Shown in pieces: positions 28,325 through 51,105 of a stretch of 64,000 bases of DNA. The position numbers and the translations under genes were made by a program. Positions within the stretch are counted from its first letter, which is position 1. The number at the start of each line of letters is the position of its first letter. Under the pieces are notes generated by a model that was not told the DNA's origin, did no database searches, and was given only the letters and a program-made list of their open reading frames with translations. The DNA is from Octopus bimaculoides. Taxonomy: Eukaryota. The stretch spans positions 1,904,167 to 1,968,166 of the forward strand of contig NC_068997.1 of the NCBI RefSeq assembly GCF_001194135.2, written 5' to 3'.

Positions 28325-29015
28325 CTAGGTTCAGCTGAAAAGTTCATTGGTCGACCAAGATGCTCTCCAAGAATCTGAACAATCTGTTTCTTTTTAACAC
28401 AATCCTCCGTTTGGTCCACATATTTCTTCCACCGGTGCTGCAATGCTTGGATCCCATTCGTGAATAAGCTATCATCCTGTTGGTAAAAAATCCTGATGAA
28501 AACAAGACCCGTTTCGTCTGCTTTCCTGGGCACCTTTTCCTGATAAACTTTCGTAACTGCCTCAGGAAGTCGACATAGTATACACCATTGAATGTGTAGC
28601 CCTTTTGCATTCCAAACCTGAGACCATCAACTCCCCTGTAGATGAAACGAACTTGACCTTTGGAGCAGATAACGAAGATTGTCAAGTTCATGCTGCAGAA
28701 TATTTTACACGGCCTCACGAGCTATGCTAACAACATTAGCTATTTGATTTATAGTCAATCGCCTATCATCCATCACCATGTGTTGAACATGATCCATGTT
28801 TTCCTCGGTGGTGTGAGTTGCAGGACGTCCAGATGTGGGGTGATCTTTAAGACTCCCTTGCCCACCTAAATTCAGCTGTCCTTGTGGCTAAGCCCTTTTG
28901 CTGCATGTACTTGATAATACCACAATGCCAAATTTTGTCAATTTCCAAAAGAAGTTTCTCCTAGTTACATCTGAAGTCTTTCTTGAACATTCAGATGTCA
29001 TTTTATCTGGAAGGA
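28325..29015 (-). mobile_element. Mariner transposon with multiple internal deletions
   Basis: DKIWHCGIIKYMQQKGL, SGRPATHTTEENMDHVQHMVMDDRRLTINQIANVV, QKGYTFNGVYYVDFLRQLRK, FTNGIQALQHRWKKYVD; a TIR-like end after TA at 28325. Confidence 0.88.
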
Positions 29016-31176: not shown

Positions 31177-31246
<70 letters not shown>

Positions 31247-31254
31247 AAAAGTGA

Positions 31255-31446
31255 TGAGCTGGCAGAATTGTTAGCACGCCGGGCGGACGTCTGCCGCAAC
31301 GTTCTGAATACGAATTCTGCCGAGGTCAACATTGCCTTTCATCCTTTCGGGGTCGACTAAAGAAGTACCAGTTACGCACTGGTGTCGATGTAATCGACTT
31401 AATTCCTTACCCCAAATTTGAAGCCTTGTGCTTCCAGTAGAAACGA
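31255..31446 (+). mobile_element. SINE family A
   Basis: GAGCTGGCAGAATTGTTAGCACGCCGGG head to the GAAACGATTATT tail. Confidence 0.88.
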
Positions 31447-31493
31447 TTATTATTATTATTATTATTATTACTATTATTATTATTATTATTATT

Positions 31494-31927
31494 GATGATG
31501 ACACTTGTTTACTGGTTATGCTTCAAGAACCCTGCGAAGAATTCTTGCAGTTCCAAGCAATGCTGATTTTTGTAGGTGTTCGACCTTCACACTTGCACCG
31601 ATCTCTTTCCGTCATGTTGGTAGCTGAGTGCCGATACTTCCAAGTGCAGCAATTACTATTGGTATCACGTTTATCTTCTTCATTGACCACAATCTTCGTA
31701 TTTCCCACTTTAAATCGTCGTAGTTGCTTACTTTATTTCTCTCACATTGATCCTGTTGTCACTGGGGCATGCTATGTCGATAATCATACATGTTGTTTAT
31801 TTTTTATTCACCACAACAATGTCCGGTTTCCGATGTCTGGTCTGGTGATCGGACTGGATCAATGCATCCAACAGGATTTTGCAGTTCTCATTTTCGGTGA
31901 CTTCCTCAAGGGTTTGTCCATATCACC

Positions 31928-31928: not shown

Positions 31929-31990
<62 letters not shown>

Positions 31991-32030
31991 CATCATCATC
32001 ATCATCATCATTATTATTTCTTTTCAAACA

Positions 32031-32243
32031 GGCGGCGAGCTGGTAGAATCGTTAGCACACCGGCTCAATGCTTAGCGGTATTTAGTCTGTCTTCCTGTTC
32101 TGGGTTCAAAAGACGCCGGGGTTGAATTTGCTTTTCCTCCTTTCGGGGTCGATAAATAAAGTATCAGTTACACACTGTGGTCAATGTAATCGACTGATGA
32201 CCCCTCCCACAAAACTTCAGGCCTTATGCCTATAGTAAAAAAG
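32031..32243 (+). mobile_element. SINE family A (A1 tail)
   Basis: GGCGGCGAGCTGGTAGAATCGTTAGCAC...CAGGCCTTATGCCTATAGTA. Confidence 0.88.
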
Positions 32244-32245
32244 GT

Positions 32246-32890
32246 TGTCCGTACATTAGAGAGATGTGGGATTGTGTGGAGCAGTTGTTGTCGCGTGTAA
32301 GACGAATTCAGCTGTCGACCGAGTGTACAGTGAAGATCGACGCACCACCTTCCCTTAACAGAGAAGGAAGGCAGATCTTACTCTGCTCAGTAGCTGTGGC
32401 AAAAGAGGCTGTGTGATGGTCCCGTCTGAAAAGTTTGAAGAGAAGCACATTCTTATCAGCTCGAGCCCTCATCAATTTCTTCAAATATCATTTGAAGAGG
32501 AAGCTAAGGGTAGAGAGGGAGGTGCTGCTTTCTAGTGTGTTTATCAAAAGATGGTCGACAGTGGCAAAATTGATGAGACTGAACGGATCTGCTCTGAATA
32601 TGCTTTTCTAAGCAGGATGAAAGAAACTGGAAGAGAGCACTTTGCCATGGCTTGGAGATGGCAGAAAAGTCCAGGATTATTATGTGGACTGCCCCGCTAT
32701 TGAGGATTTTATTCATTTATTTGTTTATTATTTACTTATCTTCTTTTATAATATATACTCTGTTATATCGTTTAACGTGACAGTATCTCCCTTTGGTTGA
32801 TGCTAACCTCATATGTTTTTGTGTAATGTTTTGTTTTGTGAAGTAACCCGTCCTTCGATATGATCCTCCATGTCTTGGGCCAAGAAATCA
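32246..32890 (+). mobile_element. Tx1/L1-like LINE, ORF2 C-terminus plus 3' UTR
   Basis: CPYIREMWDCVEQLLSRV...VAVAKEAV*WSRLK...HLKRKLRVERE...KRW, stop at 32609-32611. The CP..W after the zinc knuckle and the AK...W / R.E...RW pattern are Tx1-like. Confidence 0.65.
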
Positions 32891-32896
32891 TCATCA

Positions 32897-32927
<31 letters not shown>

Positions 32928-32928
<1 letters not shown>

Positions 32929-33204
32929 TTATGTTTGACTTTTGTTTTGCATTTGTACAAGTTGGATCCAAGTCTCACCCAGAGACCTCAAGAGACAACA
33001 AGTTAGAAGTTCATGTAGGTGTTATGCCTAGGGTACCATATATTTGGATTTGTACAGTTTTGTTCAAGTGAATGTTTAAGAAACCATAAGAAAATTATGT
33101 TTGCTTTAAAATTTGAGATCACATAGACAGTATTTTACGTAGGATATGGGCAGTTCCCATGAGCACTATCTTTTGGACTTCAGCCATTTTGGGGTTTCCT
33201 GGTT
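32928..33204 (-). mobile_element. R4/Dong-clade LINE extreme C-terminus, 3' UTR and (AAT)n tail (subfamily 1)
   Basis: PGNPKMAEVQKIVLMGTAHILRKILSM*, then a UTR ending GTCAAACAT(AAT)n; cut by the N-gap at 33205. Confidence 0.85.
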
Positions 33205-33466
33205 NNNNNNNNNNNNNNNNNNNNNNNNNNNNNNNNNNNNNNNNNNNNNNNNNNNNNNNNNNNNNNNNNNNNNNNNNNNNNNNNNNNNNNNNNNNNNNNN
33301 NNNNNNNNNNNNNNNNNNNNNNNNNNNNNNNNNNNNNNNNNNNNNNNNNNNNNNNNNNNNNNNNNNNNNNNNNNNNNNNNNNNNNNNNNNNNNNNNNNNN
33401 NNNNNNNNNNNNNNNNNNNNNNNNNNNNNNNNNNNNNNNNNNNNNNNNNNNNNNNNNNNNNNNNNN

Positions 33467-33503
<37 letters not shown>

Positions 33504-33507
33504 CATT

Positions 33508-33593
<86 letters not shown>

Positions 33594-33684
33594 CATTATC
33601 ATCATCATCATCATCATCATCATTATTATTATTATTATTATTGTTATTATTATTATTGTTGTTGTTGTTGTTGTTGTTATTATT

Positions 33685-33854
33685 GAGTGAGAGAGCAGTG
33701 CATGCCATCAAAGTGACACTGGGGTAAAATATACGAAACCCATCATACCCATCATTACTACCCGTCTGACAATGGTTACACCAGGCACATGCATCACAAC
33801 CATATGTGTGCGACATGGTGATCTCATATCAAGATAAACAGCGCATGACCTCGC
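33685..33854 (-). mobile_element. Element D, 3' 170 bp
   Basis: Homologous to 50225-50410 and 39400-39580; ends CTCTCTCACTCAATAATAACAAC on the minus strand. Confidence 0.8.
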
Positions 33855-34250
33855 TTTGGTCGTTTCAGGTCAATAAGTTCTGATCTTGAGTAACTAAGAT
33901 AAAGCCTTCGCTCTCTGCTTTTAGCCCCGAGCTCCGTAGCTACTGATGGATGTGCTTCTGGCCTATATCAGCTTGCTTACTACGGGCCACATATTTACCA
34001 TGCAGAGGTTTTTGTTCCCACCTTTGCCATTGATTTCACCTTCTTTGCAACAACAATTGTCGCATTTCCATTATATCGTTCAACCTGGGTATTATGCAGG
34101 AACTCATTAAAAATTTGTTTGCCCTCCATCATAACAGAATGAAGCTTCTTACGTCTCTCGTCGTTTTCAACGGGTTTTAACATTCAATCGTTAGATGTTT
34201 CAAGATATTTGGTCAGTCCAATTGTGGTGTATTTTTAAGAAATTTCAAAT
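33855..34250 (-). mobile_element. R4/Dong-clade LINE, post-RT region
   Basis: GLTKYLETSND*MLKPV...KKLHSV...AKKVKSMAK and WEQKPLHGKYVARSKQADIGQKHIHQ*LRSSGLKAESEGFILVTQDQNL. Confidence 0.8.
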
Positions 34251-34310
34251 TGGATCAAGCCTCGACCTCCCTGGGCACTGAGAAGGTAAAGACAATCTAG
34301 GTGGTGCATC

Positions 34311-34539
34311 TTATTTCTTTATTGCCCACAAGGGGCTAAACATAGAGGGGACAAACAAGAACAGACAAAGGGATTAAGTCGATTACATCGACCCCTGTGC
34401 GTAACTGGTACTTAATTTATCGACCCCGAAAGGATGAAAGTAAAGTCGACCTCGGCGGAATTTGAATTCAGAACGTAACGGCAGACGAAATACCGCTAAG
34501 CATTTCGCCCGGCGTGCTAACGTTTCTGCCAGCTCACCT
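34311..34539 (-). mobile_element. SINE family A with alternative tail A2, young copy
   Basis: Clean head and core; tail TTTGTCCCCTCTATGTTTAGCCCCTTGTGGGCAATAAAGAAATAAG. Confidence 0.9.
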
Positions 34540-34619
34540 GAGCATGGTCAGCACCGTTTTTGTTCAGTGGGGAAAATATCGTTCTGTTCCATAAAGGCGT
34601 ATGTTTTCTCCATGATTAC

Positions 34620-34620
<1 letters not shown>
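34539..34620 (-). repeat. Exact 82-bp duplicate of 35479-35560 (R4 RT piece)
   Basis: Identical base for base, including the in-frame TGA in EQKRC*PCS; both copies abut (ATT)n. Confidence 0.9.
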
Positions 34621-34674
<54 letters not shown>

Positions 34675-34677
34675 GTA

Positions 34678-35559
34678 TGACAAGTTAGCAGCTTATGGAT
34701 TTTCCTGATAGACATCCTTATTTCCTTGATAATCCAGTTCAACACATTGAAATCATAAACAATAACTGGACCTGCTAAGGAATTCACAACACCTTGTTAT
34801 GTGCATTTAACTCAGATTTTACGACTACTCGAACTCTCCTGTAACACTCTTTCCTCATCTTCCTTTTCATGCTTGCATGCTGAATGCCAGAGATCTAATT
34901 TATTCTGAGATATTTGTACGTTTATTCTTGCTCAAGTTCTTTTATAACTGTGTCAACATCTAAAACTACTGAATGTAAGGTCTTTAATTTCATTTTCTGG
35001 AAAGTCACTTTGGCACATTTATCAAGACCAAATTCCAGCTCGATGCTATCACTGAATACTTTCACAGTACGTAATGGTCCTTCAGGCTCATTATCATCTT
35101 TGCCATAGGTTTTTTTTTATATCATCCATGTAAAATAGATGGTTTATTTTGTTGTCGTCAATTTTGCACCCATATCCTGTTCTCTTAAGTTCACTTGTAG
35201 GGGGTATTAGGGCTATGCAAAAAATTAATGGTGAAAGTGAGTCATCTTGGAAAATGCCGCAGTTGATATTAATATTGTTTGTAGTAAGTACTCCATTAGA
35301 GTGATAGAATTGGATATTCGTATTCCACACTAACTTGTGCTTCAGGATGTTTGAAATTACAGGAGTAATTTTGAAGATATCCAGTGATTTGAAGATACAT
35401 AAATGCGGTATGCTGTCAAAGGCGTTTTTATAATCAATCCATAGGGAACTGAGATTTCAGTTGATCTTTGCATCCATATGAGCATGGTCAGCACCGTTTT
35501 TGTTCAGTGGGGAAAATATCGTTCTGTTCCATAAAGGCGTATGTTTTCTCCATGATTAC

Positions 35560-35560
<1 letters not shown>
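34678..35560 (-). mobile_element. R4/Dong-clade LINE RT domain, 5'-truncated (subfamily 1)
   Basis: IMEKTYAFMEQNDIFPTEQK...GCKDQL, WIDYKNAFDSIPH, GIFQDDSLSPLIFCIALIP, HLFYMDD, NSLAGPVIVYDF. Confidence 0.9.
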
Positions 35561-35632
<72 letters not shown>

Positions 35633-35653
35633 GCTGATGTTGTTGTTATTTAA

Positions 35654-35858
35654 GGTGGCGAGCTGGCAGAACCGTTGGCAGCCTGGTCAAGATGCTTAGC
35701 AGTATTTCGACCGTCGCTACATTCTGAATTCAAATTCCTCCGAGGTAAAGTTTGCTTTCATCCTTTCGGTGTCGATAAAATGAGTACCAGGTACGCAGTA
35801 GGGTCGGTGTAATCGATTAGCCCCCTAATTTCAGGCCTTGTCCCTGTAATAGAAAGGA
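35654..35858 (+). mobile_element. SINE family A (A1 tail) ending in (CTT)n
   Basis: GGTGGCGAGCTGGCAGAACCG...CAGGCCTTGTCCCTGTAATAGAAAGGATT. Confidence 0.85.
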
Positions 35859-35890
35859 TTCTTCTTCTTCTTCTTCTTCTTCTTCTTCTT

Positions 35891-35921
<31 letters not shown>

Positions 35922-37584
35922 TTCTTATTATTATTATTATTCAGTGAGATAGCTGAGCATGCCATCAATTATAGTTGCGTGTGGCTAAAATGATAAAAAA
36001 AAATTGGCAGTTTCCGTTCTTTAAACGTTCGTGTTTCTCAAATCAGCAACACCAAACTTCACTTAAATGTAAGAAACTAATAGCTTTTTGATATCTAGAT
36101 TCTAAGAAATACCTGAAGATTTCTGTTCTGATATGCAGCCTAAAATGACGCCACATTCGCCCTCATTCAATTCCATCTTCATTCACACAACCAATAATTG
36201 AATGAGTTTATTTTCAAAGTCCACATTTCTTTTAAACGCAGTTCAGGATCTTTTATGCTCGACTCTATAAAATAAATAACTCAGTTGTTATTCTTAGTAT
36301 GCCAGGGACGAAACTAAAATAATCGACATCGATTTTGTAAAATCAAAGCCGGCCATCAGATGTGGTGTGCAACTATAGGAATTTGAAAGAAGCCATTAAA
36401 TTAGGTAAACTACTTTGTGAACCCTCACTAAACTTTCGAATAACTCAATCAGAGAATCCTAAATAAGGTATTATTCAATATGATAATGACCAGTAGAGCG
36501 AAGAACGCACACAGTGAAAACACTTTGAATAGAATATCGATTGTTTGATTTTTAGGTACTTATGTCAATATTAGTGGAGACATTTTCAACCTCAATCTGG
36601 TGCCAAATAATAGAAAAGGATTAAATAGTTCGATATTCGATGTTATATGCTCGTTATTGTCACCTTTCCCTATTATTATGTACTTAGCTTAGGTCAGCTT
36701 GCTAGAATGTGGCAGCTTATTCAATAGCTGCATCAAGTTGTTTTCCCATTAAATATGCTAAGTATTAGTGGTGTGTTACATTTGAACAAGGCAACATGAC
36801 AGACCTTTAGTGCAAGAAATTACAGAAGATGGTTACTTGAAATGCGTGGACTCTGGGATCTATCATCATTTGAAATCAAGTGGTAACAGTTTCTATTCTC
36901 TGCGCAGTTGTAGCATAAACTTCCTGTATCTTTTTTTTTTTTTTTGCGGAAAATGACACTGATTGACAGCGAAAGGAAGTAAATGTACACGAATAGCACC
37001 ATGAAGCACCGAGTAAGAGGAGGAACGGCCTCACTGGCATAGAATCCTCAGTGATGAAACCGCTCAGCTACCTGTACTAATTAAGTATGGAAACTCACTC
37101 AGCTCTCACCTTAATGTCTTCACAAAGGAAGACAGAAGAAAGAGAGGAAGCATTGAAGAGAAGATAAGGAACGAAAGTGAGGCAAATGTTAGAAGGGATA
37201 AGAAAATAGATTCGAAATACAAAAATGCCACAGAGGAGAGTGGAAAGAAAACCTCCCTCACCAATAGACGTACAATGACACAAACGTGAACGCACAGACT
37301 CACACGCATACATACACATATATACATACACATATACATACACATATACATACACATATACATACACATATACATACACATATATACATACACACGCATA
37401 CATACACATATGCAAATCATGTGATAAGTGGTGACGTTGTGTATGGCGTAATAATACAATGTGGAATTTTTACTCCTGTGTTGTAGTGTCTTGAAGGTGA
37501 ATGATACAGAATTCGCAAACATAAAATCTGAGAAAGAATCATGTGCCAATGAAAGACACCTACATATGTGTATATTCGACCACA

Positions 37585-38841: not shown

Positions 38842-39399
38842 CGTGCGTGTGTGTGGAGTAGGGAAGTTTTGTTTAGAGTGCGTATCTGTGTGTATAAATT
38901 TGTGTCAGAAAGGTCACTTTCCTGAGTGTAGCACAAATATATTCCACTAAAACTACTGCCTGTTTTTGAATGAAAATAGTTCACTGAATTTTGTATAAAT
39001 CCTGTATAAACTTGAGCCATGAATGTTTTGGATTGAAAGTTCATTACTACGACTAGTCAAAAATTCTACAACAAATGAGCTAACCCAAACAATGGATTAT
39101 TCAAAGAATGTGCTATTATAAAATGCAAGAATAAGGTCTTGCAGAGAGAGCTTCCCAAATCGCTTCTTTTAAAATTGCTGTGTCGCTTATAAAATAATAA
39201 ACCTCCTTTCAACAGGATACAGTAGTGTACGTTATTACTTCGTTGGAATTAGTTTGAGCTTACACATAGATAGACACATACAAACACACATGTCCGCAAT
39301 AAATAATGCGCAAGTTGAATGCAAATATTTCGTGAAAGAATGTAAAACTATGAAATAAAACAGAAAAGTATCTCTAAAATATTTCGTCTGTAATTGTCA

Positions 39400-39948
39400 G
39401 TTGAAAGTGCATGACCATCACAGTCGTGCTGAGGTACAAATCCAATATAACCGTCATGACTACCTGTCTAATAAAGGTACATAAGACACATACACCACAA
39501 CTATATAAGCAAGACATGGTGATTTCGTATCAAGGTAACCAGCGCGTAACCTTGCATGTGGAAACCAGTTACAATTTCCATCAGTTCGACTAGCCCATCC
39601 CGTTTAAAAGATCCTTGAATAAGGATTGTTTAAGGATGATGAACGAAACATCCATGTTTCCCGACGTGAATTATTCAAATATCAAATAATTCCTCTCAAC
39701 ACATGGCTTTGATGCTCAACCGCTATTCCTGCTCCTGATCAGAGATGTACATATCGTCAGCCACCAAGGGACATGTTCAACTGGTTAACGTCAAGCAACT
39801 GACAAGCAAATCTGTATTGTATTGAGCAGAATATTTGCTGTAGCTTATCTTTGACATCAAGACAAAACAATGAACATGATAAAACTTCCAAACAGTCAAG
39901 ATCAGAAACCATGAGAGCCACTAACTGGTACTGCATCAGGATATTTAT
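39400..39948 (-). mobile_element. Element D, ~550 bp, diverged copy
   Basis: Colinear with 50225-50775 over its length; the 5' end abuts (AAT)n. Confidence 0.8.
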
Positions 39949-39969
39949 TATTATTATTATTATTATTAT

Positions 39970-40010
<41 letters not shown>

Positions 40011-40038
40011 CTAGTAGTAGTAGTAGTAGTAGTAGTAC

Positions 40039-40070
<32 letters not shown>

Positions 40071-40082
40071 TCATTATTATTA

Positions 40083-40114
<32 letters not shown>

Positions 40115-40574
40115 GTTATTATTATTATTATTATTATTACCATTATCCCATTACACATAAACCTCTAACATTCCTAATAAGTGTTTTACAAACAATCTCC
40201 CACCATCACCGCAACCAACACCATCACTCCCACTATCACTTCTACCACCACAATCGACAACATTGCCGTGGCCACTGCCGTCGCCGTCACCACAGCCACT
40301 ATTATATATATAGATTCTGTCTAATGTGTATCTTGTCTCATTTTTAGATGGAAACCATTGATGCGTTGATAGCAATATGAAATAATTAACCCAACTCTAC
40401 ATAAATGGACTCCAGACTTAGTTGACAGTCAATTTATAGGATATACATTGATAAATACATACATACGTACATACATAAATGCATACATACATATATACAA
40501 AAATGCACCCAGCACAAACACACACACATAAATGTGTATATATATACATATATATGTATATATAGATGTATATG

Positions 40575-44255: not shown

Positions 44256-45478
44256 CACTACCTAGAGTATGGAGGACTATATTTTGTCGTCATATTGTCT
44301 CAAAAGTTCATTTAGACTTTCCACTATACTCTAAGATGTCTCACCTATGTATGTCATGTTCATATTTTTACAAGCACCTTCTATGCATCTTATGCTGTAG
44401 ACTACATTTCTGGTTCTACAGTTAATGCCATGGCTAATCCTACATACAATGCAGTTATCATTGGTGCATATGGTATTCTCAAAGGGGTACGTCCTACATA
44501 GTTGTGATCTGATGGAGTTCCTTGGCTTTTCAACAGTCTTGATGTTGAGTTTGATCTTCTTCATAGCTTTCCTAAATCTACGGGCTAGTTCTCCATGGGC
44601 TGTGGCCTCTACAAACATCACTCCTTGATATGTGTCGGTTTTATACCACGTATTCACCCTGTTTGCTTTGTTACAAGCTCTTTGTATCCTATTCCAATCT
44701 TTGGTTTCATTACATATGTAATCTAACTTCTTTATAGCACTCCTGTATACTCGAACCCTATCTTTCTGATCATATCCAGAGAATTGCATGCAGTGCATGA
44801 AGTTCTGTACAAGTTTCTTCGTTTAATAGGGTTTGTATAGTGGGGACACGTTATTCAGTATCCTAAGTAAGTCTGCTATCAGTATGTTTATTTTCACGTT
44901 GTGTGACAAAGCAGAGTTCTTGTGATCAACATATTTCGAAGCTATGGATTTCATGTAGTAGGAGTAGAGGAGCTGCACTCTGTTCACGGTCTCTAACCAA
45001 AGTTCAGTAGCAATGAGGAGGAGGAGTCTATGGTATTCTCAAAGGGGTACGTCCTACATAGTTGCGAGGTGTCTAGTGGGGTAATCTACAGTTACCTTGA
45101 TACTTTGGTGGATGGAGTTAGCTACTTGCTGGATGCTCTCCATTATGCTCCTTTTAGTTTCTGCATTACCGTTACTAGGATATTAATATCAGCTACATAC
45201 CTACTGTAAAGTAGAAGAGTTGCGAACTGTTCTGCTAAGGATTGCTTAAGATTTCTGTCCCACCAGGTCATGAAGAGGCCGGCCACATCTCCAGTTACAC
45301 CGATACCAATGGCTGCAGCTTGAACCTGCATGTATAGTTAGTTTCTTGTTAAACTTTACTATGTGGTTCTTCAAGGTGGTTCTTATGCTAGCCCCTATTG
45401 CATGTGCAATCATTCCTTTCCCCTGATTGTTGTTCTCAGTCTCTTGGGTGAGGACACTATGCAATGTGGCCAGCGCTT
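44256..45478 (-). mobile_element. Penelope-like element (Neptune-like): RT C-half, Cys-rich linker, start of GIY-YIG
   Basis: KNHIVKFN, AIGIGVTGDVAGLFMTWWD, LYSRYVADINI (YVDD-like), VTVDYP, YMKSIAS, MQFSGY, CTNDNCIVC...NCRTRNVVYSIRC...C...YIGETS. Confidence 0.88.
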
Positions 45479-48625: not shown

Positions 48626-49445
48626 AATTTTTTTATTTGGACTGGTGGATATGAGTTTGTGGCTTGGAACGTTAGATGCCTTGTACATTTATTTATACAC
48701 CAAGCAAAGAGGCTCCTTGCAGAGTGAAGAAATTCCCCTCTCTATCCATCATCTTCAACTGCCACTTAAACTTCTTGCAACTACCCTGCAATTTGGAAAA
48801 TAACAATTCTGTGATAATTCCAAATTGCTTGATCCTACACATTTACGTTCAATTTCTCTGTAGCGTTCTTCTAAAATTCCCTTCTGTAGTAATTGGAAAG
48901 ATAACATATTACAATACCAACATTCAGCTAACATGTCGTCTGCTTTCAAAAGCATTTCGTCAATATCTGCAACATAATTCGTATGACTCTGTACCTTTAC
49001 TCACTCGTTTGTCTACCTCTTTCTTGTCGAAATTACATCTGTCAACATCTGCTTGTAAGTGTAAGACTCGGCCGATTTTCGCCAATTTCCTTGTTATTCT
49101 AACTACCATCTCAAGACTTTCTTTTGTCCGTTAGATTATTTCCGTACTTTACCTAACGATAAAGACGTTCTTGAATTATTTATATCATTCAGTTGGATTT
49201 TAATATTCTTTTTACCCTTCAGAAGTATTCTCTCTTGATGTTGGCTTTCGTTAGCCCACCCTTTATATCATCAGCTTCCAGAACTTTCAGATATATCTTC
49301 ATCATCGTCCTCCTTATCATCATTGTCATTTTCATCGTCATCGACGTCGTCGTTATCATCATCAGCATCACCATCATCAACCACAAATACGTTCTGAGAT
49401 CAAATTCAGCTTCAATCTTATTCTGTCCGTTTAATTTCGAATTAA

Positions 49446-50110
49446 GGATCAGTCTCTTTTATCTGCTTCATGACCTCTCCTAACGGTATCGATAGCCCGT
49501 CCATACATTTGATTTTGCTTCTCTCCAAGACTAACACACCACACTTTCTCAGTCCGAACTCCATTCCGATAACAGCACTGAAAGTATCAACGAGGAAATT
49601 GACTTGGGATTCATCTTTACCATAAAGTTTCAGGTCATCCATGAATAACAAATGTTTGAATTTTTGTTGGCGGCTTTTGCTTTCCTCAGAATCAGTTTTA
49701 GTGGTATCAAGCACAGTACAAATATCAGTGGGGACAGGCAGTTCCCCTTGAAGATGCCCCTCCTGATTTCTATTGTCCCTAAACTTCTTCCGTATGCTGT
49801 CAAGTCCGTCCTCCAATTCGCTATACTTTTTCCAAGCAATCGTTCAACATTCGATGCAATACCAAATAGGTTCATACATTCCATAATCTAAGAGTTGGGA
49901 TCGTATCGTACGCCTTACGATAGTCGATCCATGTCACGGCTAAGTCACTTTCCCTCCTCTTGCAGTCACTAAGTACAGTTTTATCTATCAAGAGTTGATC
50001 CTTGGTGCCTCTGCACTTACGCTTGCAACCTTTCTGTTCATGTGGCAGGACTCCATTTTTTCCAAATGTTCGTACATTGACTCTGCGAGTATTCCAGTCA
50101 ATAATTTCCA

Positions 50111-50113
<3 letters not shown>
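49446..50113 (-). mobile_element. R4/Dong-clade LINE RT domain, 5'-truncated (subfamily 2)
   Basis: [92 protein letters not shown]. Confidence 0.92.
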
Positions 50114-50173
<60 letters not shown>

Positions 50174-50224
50174 CATTATTATTATTATCATTATTATTAT
50201 TATTATTATTATTATCTTCATCAT

Positions 50225-50775
50225 TATAATGCATGCTGTCATTGTGACACTGGGGTAAAGTATATGAAGCCCAATATCCACATCATGATGACACGTCTGA
50301 TAAGGGTACACCACGCACATGCATCACAACCACATGTGCGCAACATGGTGGTCTCATATCAAGATAAACAGCGCACGGCCTGGCAAGTGGGGCCCAGTTA
50401 AAATTTCTTTTTCAGATGAAGTAGGCCAACTAGTTCAAAATGTCCCTGAATAATAGTTGTTTAAGGATGTTGAACGAAGCACTCATGATTCCAGAGGTGA
50501 ATTGCCCAAACCCCAAAAGAATTCCTTTCAACACAGGACTATAATGCTCCTCCACTACTTCTGCTCATGATCAGAGATGATACATTTATCGTCAGACACT
50601 AAGGGACCCACTCAACTGGTTCAGATCAAACAAATGACAAACAAATCTCTGGTATTGAGCAGAATATTTGTTGTATTTGTTTAAACCAAGACTAAACACT
50701 ATACATGATAACACTTCCAATCAGTTAAGATTAGAAGCTATGAGAGCCACGGCATGTTACTGTAGCACTGCATTT
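50225..50775 (-). mobile_element. Element D, ~550 bp, between two AAT tracts
   Basis: Homologous to 39400-39948 and 33685-33854; no long ORF and no tRNA A/B boxes seen. Confidence 0.82.
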
Positions 50776-50789
50776 ATTATTGTTATATG

Positions 50790-50900
50790 ATTCAATTTTG
50801 CTTTGTATATGTACAAGTTGAATCCAAGTCTCACTCAGAGACCTCAAAAGACAAGAAATTCAAGTTGGTGTTATGCATAGGGTACCATATATTTGGTTTT
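50790..50900 (-). mobile_element. R4/Dong subfamily 1 3' UTR
   Basis: GTACAAGTTGAATCCAAGTCTCACTCAGAGACCTCAA...AGGGTACCATATATTTGG matches 32940-33050. Confidence 0.82.
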
Positions 50901-50929
50901 GCATCATCATCATCATTATGATTGTTATT

Positions 50930-51105
50930 TCTCTACTTCTATTATACATCCCCTTTTATAACCTTTAATGTGGCAGTATCTCCCCTTGATTGACGTTAAC
51001 CCCACATGTTTTTGTTTTTGTAATTTTTTTTTATTGTACTGTAACTCGTCCTTCGATATTGTCCTTCATATCTTGGGCCCTTGTGGCGAATGAAAGAAAT
51101 CAGTA
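50930..51105 (+). mobile_element. Tx1-like LINE 3' UTR and tail
   Basis: CAGTATCTCCC...GTCCTTCGATAT...TCTTGGGCC matches 32760-32885; extends to CCCTTGTGGCGAATGAAAGAAATCAG, then (TAT)n. Confidence 0.7.

What the first reader, a model, noticed from the sequence alone, without database searches (positions are those of the whole stretch)
50225..50775. Element D: ~550-bp non-coding, non-tRNA retroposon that seems to share the (AAT)n target of Dong/R4
Seen: four copies, at 50225-50775 and 39400-39948 (full) and 33685-33854 and ~35942-35970 (3' pieces). All are on the minus strand. Three end in an AAT-type tail, both full copies start at AAT, and all match the orientation of every R4/Dong fragment in the window. 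There is no ORF and no Pol III A/B box, unlike SINE A and B. Known: Dong (R4 clade) inserts into TAA repeats, and R2 has short non-autonomous derivatives (SIDEs). Inference: D is a non-autonomous, site-specific passenger of Dong/R4 machinery, possibly an undescribed SIDE/SINE-like class.
Basis: partly seen in the sequence, partly recalled or inferred. Interest (0 to 1): 0.78.

Follow-up and report, generated by a model that had tools for sequence, protein, structure and literature searches.

The report
Short non-coding retroposon with AAT tail
Element D is a real, old, roughly 550-base non-coding repeat that looks like a retroposon needing another element's enzymes, sits among Dong/R4-like LINE pieces in AAT microsatellites, and cannot be shown from this window to be their site-specific passenger.

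Summary
There are two near-full copies: D1 at 50771..50225 and D2 at 39942..39396, 74.5% identical. D3 (33856..33685) is a 3' fragment of about 170 nt and D4 (35968..35942) one of 27 nt. All are on the minus strand. D1, D3 and D4 run into (AAT)n; D2 does not. D has no ORF, tRNA, Rfam family, Pol III A/B box, HDV-like fold or terminal inverted repeats.

The neighbouring LINE pieces have an R2-like reverse transcriptase and a C-terminal restriction-like endonuclease region. All are on the minus strand. Every visible 5' junction, and both 3' ends not obscured by D1, abut (AAT)n. This fits Dong/R4, but the clade was not placed by phylogeny.

The best reading is a retroposon with an AAU-repeat tail, copied by a LINE, probably by these LINEs.

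- D shares nothing but the tail with the two LINE 3' ends present, so it is not SIDE-like by that test.
- The two truncated copies have no AAT upstream, and D3 abuts the LINE ORF directly.
- The four copies make only three independent loci.

No genome-wide copies could be reached, so target specificity and LINE partnership stay untested. This is an ordinary-to-moderately interesting repeat family.

The parts
50225..50771 (-). D1, near-full copy of element D (body)
   Evidence: It is 74.5% identical to D2 over 522 nt, and the nhmmer E-value is 3e-186. The 3' end lacks the CTGCTCTCTCACTC stretch seen in D3 and D4.
50772..50781 (-). AATAATAAAT directly upstream of D1, best read as the short tail of the truncated LINE 3' UTR (Y')
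   Evidence: The other Y' copy ends in (AAT)10.
50112..50224 (-). D1 tail and microsatellite: ATTATAATGATGAAGAT, then (AAT)8 GAT (AAT)4 GAT (AAT)20. It runs straight into a 5'-truncated LINE.
39396..39942 (-). D2, near-full and older copy of D. It carries 7 extra bases at the 5' end relative to D1 and has no AAT tract at its 3' end.
39943..40138 (-). Compound microsatellite upstream of D2: (AAT)n, then (ACT)n, then (AAT)8 AAAT
33685..33856 (-). D3, the 3' 170 nt of D. It is joined at about 33857 to LINE coding sequence in the same orientation.
   Evidence: It is 83% identical to D1. LINE protein homology ends at 33868.
33467..33684 (-). D3 tail: AATAATAA, then (CAA)n, then blocks of (AAT)n and (GAT)n, ending in an assembly gap
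35942..35968 (-). D4, a 27-nt 3'-terminal piece of D
35872..35941 (-). D4 tail, (AAT)5 AAG AAT (AAG)n. It is continuous with the 3' microsatellite of a plus-strand tRNA-like SINE (35648-35870).
48966..50110 (-). RLE-type (Dong/R4-like) LINE fragment, aa 484-826 of reference P0254. It starts right after D1's (AAT)n.
33868..35559 (-). Second LINE copy, aa 490-917. It starts right after (AAT)11. It is interrupted by (AAT)18, an 84-nt restart and a SINE (34674..~34345), and it ends at D3.
32929..33204 (-). LINE ORF end (..VLMGTAHILRKILSM*) plus a 3' UTR of about 190 nt (Y'), followed by (AAT)10 at 32928..32899
50782..50901 (-). Y', a 5'-truncated copy of the same LINE 3' UTR, immediately upstream of D1
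   Evidence: (83% over 135 nt).
31494..31922 (-). LINE 3' end of another subfamily, aa 986-1119, then a stop codon and a 22-nt UTR. It is flanked by (AAT)20 upstream (31988..31929) and (AAT)n downstream (31493..31446).

Best explanation
D is an old family of short (about 550 bp), non-coding non-LTR retroposons that need another element's enzymes.

Proposed mechanism. A D transcript ending in AAU repeats is copied into the genome by target-primed reverse transcription, using the enzyme of a LINE. The most likely partner is the Dong/R4-like LINE whose fragments surround D. That LINE also ends in (AAT)n and sits in (AAT)n. A nick in a TAA/ATT microsatellite leaves a 3' end that can pair with the AAU tail and prime cDNA synthesis. 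Incomplete copying gives 5'-truncated pieces such as D3 and D4. Tails of resident elements then become targets for the next insertion, which builds same-strand nests such as Y'-D1-LINE.

What is shown:
- D is a discrete repeat with a fixed 3' end.
- It has a tail and truncated copies.
- It has no coding capacity.
- It lies together with (AAT)n-flanked RLE-type LINEs and on the same strand.

What is inferred: the RNA intermediate, the identity of the partner LINE, priming on the microsatellite, and any target preference. How D is transcribed is unknown, since no promoter was recognised.
For: - Discrete unit with unrelated flanks: homology between D1 and D2 stops at the element ends.
- Shared 3' end and nested 5' truncations: full, full, 170 nt and 27 nt.
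- (AAT)n-type tail on 3 of 4 copies.
- No ORF and no match to full-length LINE proteins (best E 0.27 or worse).
- No terminal inverted repeats.
- Even divergence of 66-78% along almost the whole length, falling to 50-57% over the last ~60 alignment columns; 78 transitions against 62 transversions. This looks like neutral decay.
- Both full copies lie directly after AAT repeats. AAT-phase tracts make up only about 1.5% of the window. For D1 the repeats are the tail of a LINE 3' UTR.
- LINE fragments are on the same strand, with (AAT)n at every visible 5' junction and at two of three 3' ends; the third (Y' before D1) has only the short AATAATAAAT.
- The LINE is RLE-type.
- Dong elements are reported to target TAA repeats, including in a mollusc (PMC3812793). 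Dong-R4 LINEs are abundant and recently active in octopus genomes (PMC13282606, PMC9115989). That this window is from an octopus is my inference from the look of its SINEs, not a tool result.
Against: - There are only four copies at three loci.
- D shares no sequence with the two LINE 3' ends present, apart from the tail.
- The 5' flanks of D3 and D4 are not AAT, and D2 lacks a tail.
- No target-site duplications could be read.
- No promoter or 5' processing signal was found.
- A proposed 20-pair 3' hairpin keeps 95% of its pairs, with 5 double changes across 3 copies. It has no thermodynamic support: z is between 0.1 and 1.4.
- No copies from elsewhere in the genome could be obtained.
Confidence: 0.5

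Rival explanations
1. D is not an independent element. It is the long 3' module (3' UTR or transduced downstream sequence) of one LINE subfamily, and all copies here are 5'-truncated. Under this reading the shared 5' border arises because cDNA reaching an internal AAUAAUAAAU pairs with the AAT target, so truncation recurs at that point.
For: - LINE subfamilies in the window already differ greatly in 3' UTR length: 22 nt against about 190 nt.
- D1 directly follows a LINE 3' UTR plus AATAATAAAT.
- D3 is fused to a LINE ORF in the same orientation.
- Two unrelated LINE copies are themselves truncated within about 7 codons of each other, next to (AAT)n. Recurrent junctions at AAT repeats therefore do happen here.
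Against: - None of the three LINE 3' ends in the window contains D sequence.
- Upstream of D2 lies a compound microsatellite and non-LINE DNA.
- The LINE-D3 junction is at aa ~917 of ~1122, not at the ORF end.
Confidence: 0.2
2. D is a non-coding retroposon that cannot move itself, but its partner is a different LINE clade that also makes TAA-type tails. Its closeness to Dong/R4 fragments would then be secondary, because any AAT tail is a landing pad for a TAA-specific LINE.
For: - There is no sequence link between D and the Dong-like 3' ends.
- The 5' flanks of D3 and D4 are not microsatellite, as expected for untargeted insertion.
- Other LINE types with trinucleotide tails are present, such as X with an (ATC)n(ATT)n tail.
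- By my own recollection, untested here, I-clade LINEs end in TAA repeats.
Against: - The only LINE 3' ends with AAT-phase tails seen in the window are the RLE-type ones.
- Both full-length D copies sit in AAT repeats.
Confidence: 0.2
3. D is not a retroposon. It is either a MITE-like DNA transposon that prefers TAA/TTA sites, or a piece of segmentally duplicated DNA.
For: A short complementarity exists between the 5' end (GCAGTGC..ATGCC) and the 3' region (GGCATGCACTGC in D3), read directly. AT-rich trinucleotide targets are typical of some DNA transposons; this is from my own knowledge.
Against: - No terminal inverted repeat was found by the tool.
- The shared 3' sequence runs 10-11 nt past the complementary stretch.
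- The fragments all keep the same end, which is the pattern of 5' truncation.
- Flanks of the copies are unrelated.
Confidence: 0.05

Closest known systems
R2 SIDEs (short internally deleted elements of R2; PMC3414825)
   Same: They are a few hundred bases long and non-coding. They depend on an RLE-type LINE and are found where the LINE inserts.
   Different: SIDEs keep the LINE's 5' ribozyme and its 3' UTR. D shows no HDV-like fold and no similarity to the LINE 3' ends available. The LINE 5' end is not in the window.
SINEs with LINE-type simple-repeat tails (tRNA-, 5S- or snRNA-headed; PMC4494074, PMC5786205)
   Same: Similar size, non-coding, a repeat tail, 5'-truncated copies, and presumed copying by a LINE enzyme.
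   Different: D has no Pol III head: no A or B boxes, no tRNA, 5S, 7SL or snRNA match. It also has no LINE-derived 3' segment.
Dong / R4-clade LINEs specific for (TAA)n (PMC3812793, PMC3774820)
   Same: D has the same tail and target repeat, the same strand relative to the microsatellite, and is physically nested with such LINE fragments.
   Different: Dong is autonomous and coding, and has a 5' HDV-like ribozyme. D is non-coding and unrelated in sequence.
Microsatellite-associated repeat families made by RTE LINEs in Lepidoptera (PMC2887409)
   Same: These are repeat families defined by a conserved sequence next to a microsatellite. They build clusters of nested insertions at simple repeats.
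   Different: Those families are LINE 3' ends themselves. D does not match any LINE sequence seen here.

Membership tests
Non-LTR retroposon copy (made by target-primed reverse transcription) | Simple-repeat or A-rich 3' tail at a fixed 3' end | tested here: met
   D1, D3 and D4 end in (AAT)n-type tracts at the same element end. D2 does not.
Non-LTR retroposon copy (made by target-primed reverse transcription) | 5'-truncated copies that keep the 3' end | tested here: met
   The copies are about 547, 547, 172 and 27 nt long, and all share the 3' end.
Non-LTR retroposon copy (made by target-primed reverse transcription) | Target-site duplications of variable length | tested here: inconclusive
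   The flanks are microsatellite, nested elements or an assembly gap, so no duplication can be read.
SINE | Head derived from a small RNA, with an internal Pol III promoter | tested here: not met
   No tRNA. No Rfam hit at the gathering threshold or at E up to 10 apart from noise. No A or B box in any copy.
SINE | 3' region shared with the partner LINE | tested here: not met
   Scores against both LINE 3' ends in the window equal the shuffle means, while the control scores 145. Only the (AAT)n is shared. Other LINE subfamilies of the genome were not available.
SIDE-like internally deleted LINE | 5' end equal to the LINE 5' end, with an HDV-like self-cleaving ribozyme | tested here: inconclusive
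   No ribozyme family in Rfam at E up to 10. My own loose descriptor finds nothing at the 5' border in D1 and nothing at all in D2. No LINE 5' end is in the window for comparison.
SIDE-like internally deleted LINE | 3' end equal to the LINE 3' UTR | tested here: not met
   There is also no protein-level trace of LINE sequence in D.
Site-specific (TAA)n inserter | Target repeat on both sides of the insertion, including truncated copies | tested here: inconclusive
   AAT repeats lie upstream of D1 and D2 but not upstream of D3 (LINE ORF) or D4 (unique DNA). They lie downstream of D1, D3 and D4 but not D2. There are four copies only.
Dong/R4-clade LINE (for the neighbouring fragments) | Single ORF with a reverse transcriptase followed by a Cys-His motif and a C-terminal restriction-like endonuclease, and no N-terminal APE domain | tested here: met
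   The window fragments map to aa 484-1120 of full-length relatives. Those relatives carry CRxC..H..C and RRPD..D..K motifs C-terminal to RVT_1. They have no APE domain. Their best PDB matches are R2 proteins.
Dong/R4-clade LINE (for the neighbouring fragments) | Insertion in (TAA)n | tested here: met
   (AAT)n lies at all four visible 5' junctions and after two of three 3' ends; the third (Y' before D1) is followed only by AATAATAAAT.
Dong/R4-clade LINE (for the neighbouring fragments) | Phylogenetic placement of the reverse transcriptase inside the R4 clade | not tested
MITE / DNA transposon | Terminal inverted repeats and fixed target-site duplications | tested here: not met
   No terminal inverted repeat was found. 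The shared sequence extends beyond the short complementary stretch.

The most novel reading that the evidence does not exclude
D is a true parasite of Dong/R4-type LINEs. It would be recognised through little more than its (UAA)n 3' repeat and inserted preferentially into TAA/ATT microsatellites. That would make it the first non-coding dependent partner described for the R4 clade, and a short retroposon class with neither a Pol III head nor LINE-derived ends. Together with its LINE it would colonise the trinucleotide tails of other retroposons and build the same-strand nests seen at 31-36 kb and 50-51 kb.
Probability: 0.2. Interest if true: 0.55.

Novelty: new member of a known kind. Interest (0 to 1): 0.3.

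Why it matters
If D really rides on Dong/R4 enzymes, it would show that an RLE-type, microsatellite-specific LINE can copy an unrelated RNA that shares only the repeat tail. That bears on how such LINEs recognise their template. It also bears on how microsatellites in repeat-rich genomes (probably a cephalopod) grow into clusters of nested retroposons. As it stands, D is one more unclassified short repeat family. Its practical value is for repeat annotation: D, and the LINE 3' UTR here called Y', should be masked as retroposon sequence and not treated as unique DNA.

Tried and rejected
Attempts to find more copies outside the window all failed:
- A three-row alignment of D-derived peptides, searched against the 5.8-billion protein set to fish for ORFs called through D tails, found no candidate.
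- Exact-pattern DNA scans with a degenerate D motif found nothing in metagenome contigs or viral contigs.
- A SINE-head motif, used to detect any host DNA among the metagenome contigs, also found nothing.
- A full-text search for D and SINE strings in papers found none.

Attempts to identify the source organism failed:
- Exact look-up of a window ORF: not on record.
- Homologue search with the same intact 155-aa ORF: nothing.
- The octopus assignment therefore rests on my recollection of the SINE type and on the repeat mix. It is not a tool result.

Considered and rejected:
- D's 3' 170 nt as the Cys-His coding part of the LINE. This was suggested by the in-frame reading across the LINE-D3 junction. 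Full-length LINE proteins align only up to 33868, and D1 and D2 give E of 0.27 or worse.
- D as part of a larger duplicated segment. The flanks are unrelated.
- An HDV-like ribozyme at the 5' end.
- A Pol III head.
- Terminal inverted repeats.

Left as weak: a conserved 3' hairpin, which has covariation counts in its favour but no thermodynamic support.

Dropped: my idea that plus-strand SINEs here generally carry (ATT)n tails. Only 2 of the roughly 10 SINE copies show this.

Full report
**What is there**

The window is a draft eukaryotic assembly. It has 12 N gaps, dense microsatellites and several tRNA-like SINE copies. On the minus strand, D1 (50771..50225) and D2 (39942..39396) align over their whole length at 74.5% identity (E 3e-90), and homology stops at both ends. 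D3 (33856..33685) matches the last ~170 nt of D at 83% to D1 and 76% to D2.

D4 (35968..35942) is only the last 27 nt. It matches D3 at 23 of 26 bases, with a score of 37 against a shuffle maximum of 22. The 35-nt end motif is found at D3 and D4 only, and in none of 100 shuffles. A profile of D finds nothing else in the window.

D1, D3 and D4 run into AAT-type tracts; D2 does not. Both long copies are preceded by AATAATAAAT. Their first bases differ by about 7 nt.

**What D is not**

- All six frames are closed.
- Divergence between D1 and D2 is even along almost the whole length (66-78% per 50 columns), falling to 50-57% over the last ~60 alignment columns. There are 78 transitions and 62 transversions, the look of neutral decay.
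- No tRNA, no Rfam family at the gathering threshold, and only snoRNA-like noise at E up to 10 on either long copy.
- No A or B box inside any copy.
- My own loose descriptor for the HDV-like fold finds nothing at the 5' border of D1 and nothing in D2.
- No terminal inverted repeats.
- Eight full-length LINE proteins give no meaningful tblastn hit on D1 or D2 (best E 0.27).

**The neighbours**

A reverse-transcriptase fragment next to D1 has hundreds of relatives. A C-terminal fragment at 31.9 kb retrieved full-length proteins of about 1100 aa. These have RVT_1, then a CRxC..H..C motif and an RRPD..D..K region, and they end in ..LLGTA.ILRKVL. They have no APE domain. Their best solved relatives are R2 proteins (E 1e-29), ahead of L1 ORF2p (7e-19).

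Mapped on one such reference, P0254, the window holds these pieces, all on the minus strand:

| Window coordinates | Reference residues | Notes |
|---|---|---|
| 50110..48966 | aa 484-826 | Starts after D1's (AAT)n |
| 35559..34683 | aa 490-793 | Followed by an insertion |
| 34300..33868 | aa 804-917 | Continues the copy above; ends at D3 |
| 33204..33122 | last 18 aa | Followed by a ~190-nt 3' UTR (Y') |
| 31922..31522 | aa 986-1119 | Followed by a stop codon and a 22-nt UTR |

A second, truncated Y' copy lies at 50901..50782, 83% identical to the first. Every visible LINE 5' junction is (AAT)n, at 50213-50112, 35593-35561, 34674-34621 and 31988-31929. Two of the three LINE 3' ends are followed by (AAT)n; the third, Y' before D1, is followed only by AATAATAAAT.

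This is the behaviour reported for Dong, which targets TAA repeats in insects and in a snail (PMC3812793) and has TAA repeats at its 5' junction (PMC3774820). Dong-R4 LINEs are abundant, and some are recently active, in octopus genomes (PMC13282606, PMC9115989, PMC8967140). Clade membership was not tested by phylogeny. The organism could not be identified with the tools.

**How D sits among them**

Locus A reads on the minus strand in this order:
1. (AAT)n
2. X, the reversed 3' end of a plus-strand LINE
3. (GAT)n
4. Y', a truncated LINE 3' UTR
5. AATAATAAAT
6. D1
7. (AAT)n with GAT interruptions
8. a 5'-truncated LINE

So D1's 'start at AAT' is the tail of another retroposon, and D1's own tail is the 5' flank of the next LINE.

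D2 follows a compound (AAT)n-(ACT)n-(AAT)8 tract.

D4's tail merges with the microsatellite at the 3' end of a plus-strand SINE, and its 5' flank is unique DNA.

D3 is fused at about 33857 to LINE coding sequence (aa ~917) in the same orientation. Its tail runs into an assembly gap, after which the last 18 codons of a LINE and Y' appear. Three readings of D3 remain open: a plain insertion into a LINE whose remainder is hidden in the gap, an insertion with a target deletion, or a template-switch chimera.

**Weighing**

Four features together point to a retroposon that cannot move itself: a discrete unit, a fixed 3' end, nested 5' truncations and a trinucleotide tail. AAT-phase tracts cover only about 1.5% of the window. 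Two of two full-length copies abutting such tracts is unlikely by chance, and the only LINE 3' ends with that tail phase here are the RLE-type ones. This makes the Dong/R4-like LINE the most likely partner.

The link is circumstantial, for these reasons:
- D shares no sequence with either LINE 3' end. Smith-Waterman scores equal the shuffle means, while the Y'-Y' control scores 145.
- The truncated copies lack upstream AAT, and D2 lacks a tail.
- 'All on the minus strand' amounts to three independent loci.
- (TAA)n tails also occur in other LINE clades (my own knowledge).

RNAalifold proposed a 20-pair hairpin 50-115 nt from the tail. It keeps 95% of its pairs in three copies with five double changes, against 22-60% in slid controls. 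Single-sequence folds do not favour it and give z between 0.1 and 1.4. I count it as weak.

**Verdict**

D is best filed as a new, unclassified member of the short non-coding non-LTR retroposons. The probable partner is a Dong/R4-like LINE, but this is unproven. D is not SIDE-like by the tests possible here, and target specificity is undecided. Curated octopus libraries already list hundreds of unclassified SINE families (PMC13282606), so D may well be present there under a number.

Noticed in passing
window 50110 and 35559 (minus strand): Two LINE copies have no nucleotide similarity to each other, yet both are 5'-truncated within about 7 codons (aa 484 and 490 of the reference), each directly after (AAT)n. 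This suggests a recurrent junction point, possibly microhomology with AAT repeats or a processing site, and not random truncation.
   Followed up: partly
window 34537-34676 and 35479-35616: A 138-nt stretch, made of (AAT)n plus the first 84 nt of the LINE fragment, occurs twice at 95% identity, 940 nt apart. The second copy sits between aa 793 and aa 804 of the same LINE and is followed by a SINE (34536..~34345). This is a rearrangement, a nested insertion or an assembly error.
   Followed up: partly
window 33857 (junction), 33205-33466 (gap): The LINE ORF (aa ~917) is joined directly to the last 170 nt of D in the same orientation. About 200 codons of the LINE are missing, unless they lie in the assembly gap after D3's tail. 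This could be a template-switch chimera or an insertion with a deletion.
   Followed up: partly
window 32929-33120 and 50782-50901: Y' is the ~190-nt 3' UTR of one Dong/R4-like LINE subfamily, with a conserved GGTCTC..GAGACT hairpin. Another subfamily at 31494-31522 has only a 22-nt UTR before (AAT)n.
   Followed up: yes
window 32500-32898 and 50925-51104 (plus strand): X is the 3' end of a different LINE, unclassified, with an ORF tail resembling RTE- or CR1-type ends by eye. It has an (ATC)n(ATT)n tail. At 32899-32928 it lies tail-to-tail with the minus-strand Y', so the two elements share one microsatellite on opposite strands.
   Followed up: partly
window 31179-31493, 31929-32240, 35561-35941: Three plus-strand tRNA-like SINE copies each have an ATT-type microsatellite directly before their head, and two also have one after their 3' end. 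The 31-36 kb region looks like one microsatellite locus blown up by nested insertions. 19 of 21 perfect (AAT)5+ tracts in the window read AAT on the minus strand.
   Followed up: partly
window 44331-44798 (minus strand): An intact 155-aa ORF ends in ..TYIGETS, which resembles a GIY-YIG motif. It has no homologue at E <= 1e-5 in the 5.8-billion protein set, no Pfam hit, and is not on record by exact look-up.
   Followed up: partly
window 59522-60069 (plus) and 28344-28718 (minus): ORF pieces that look like mariner-type transposase by eye. They have no Pfam hit at E <= 0.01.
   Followed up: no
window 15927-16213: A ~290-nt stretch matches its own reverse complement at 78%, so it is palindromic. 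It was not examined.
   Followed up: no
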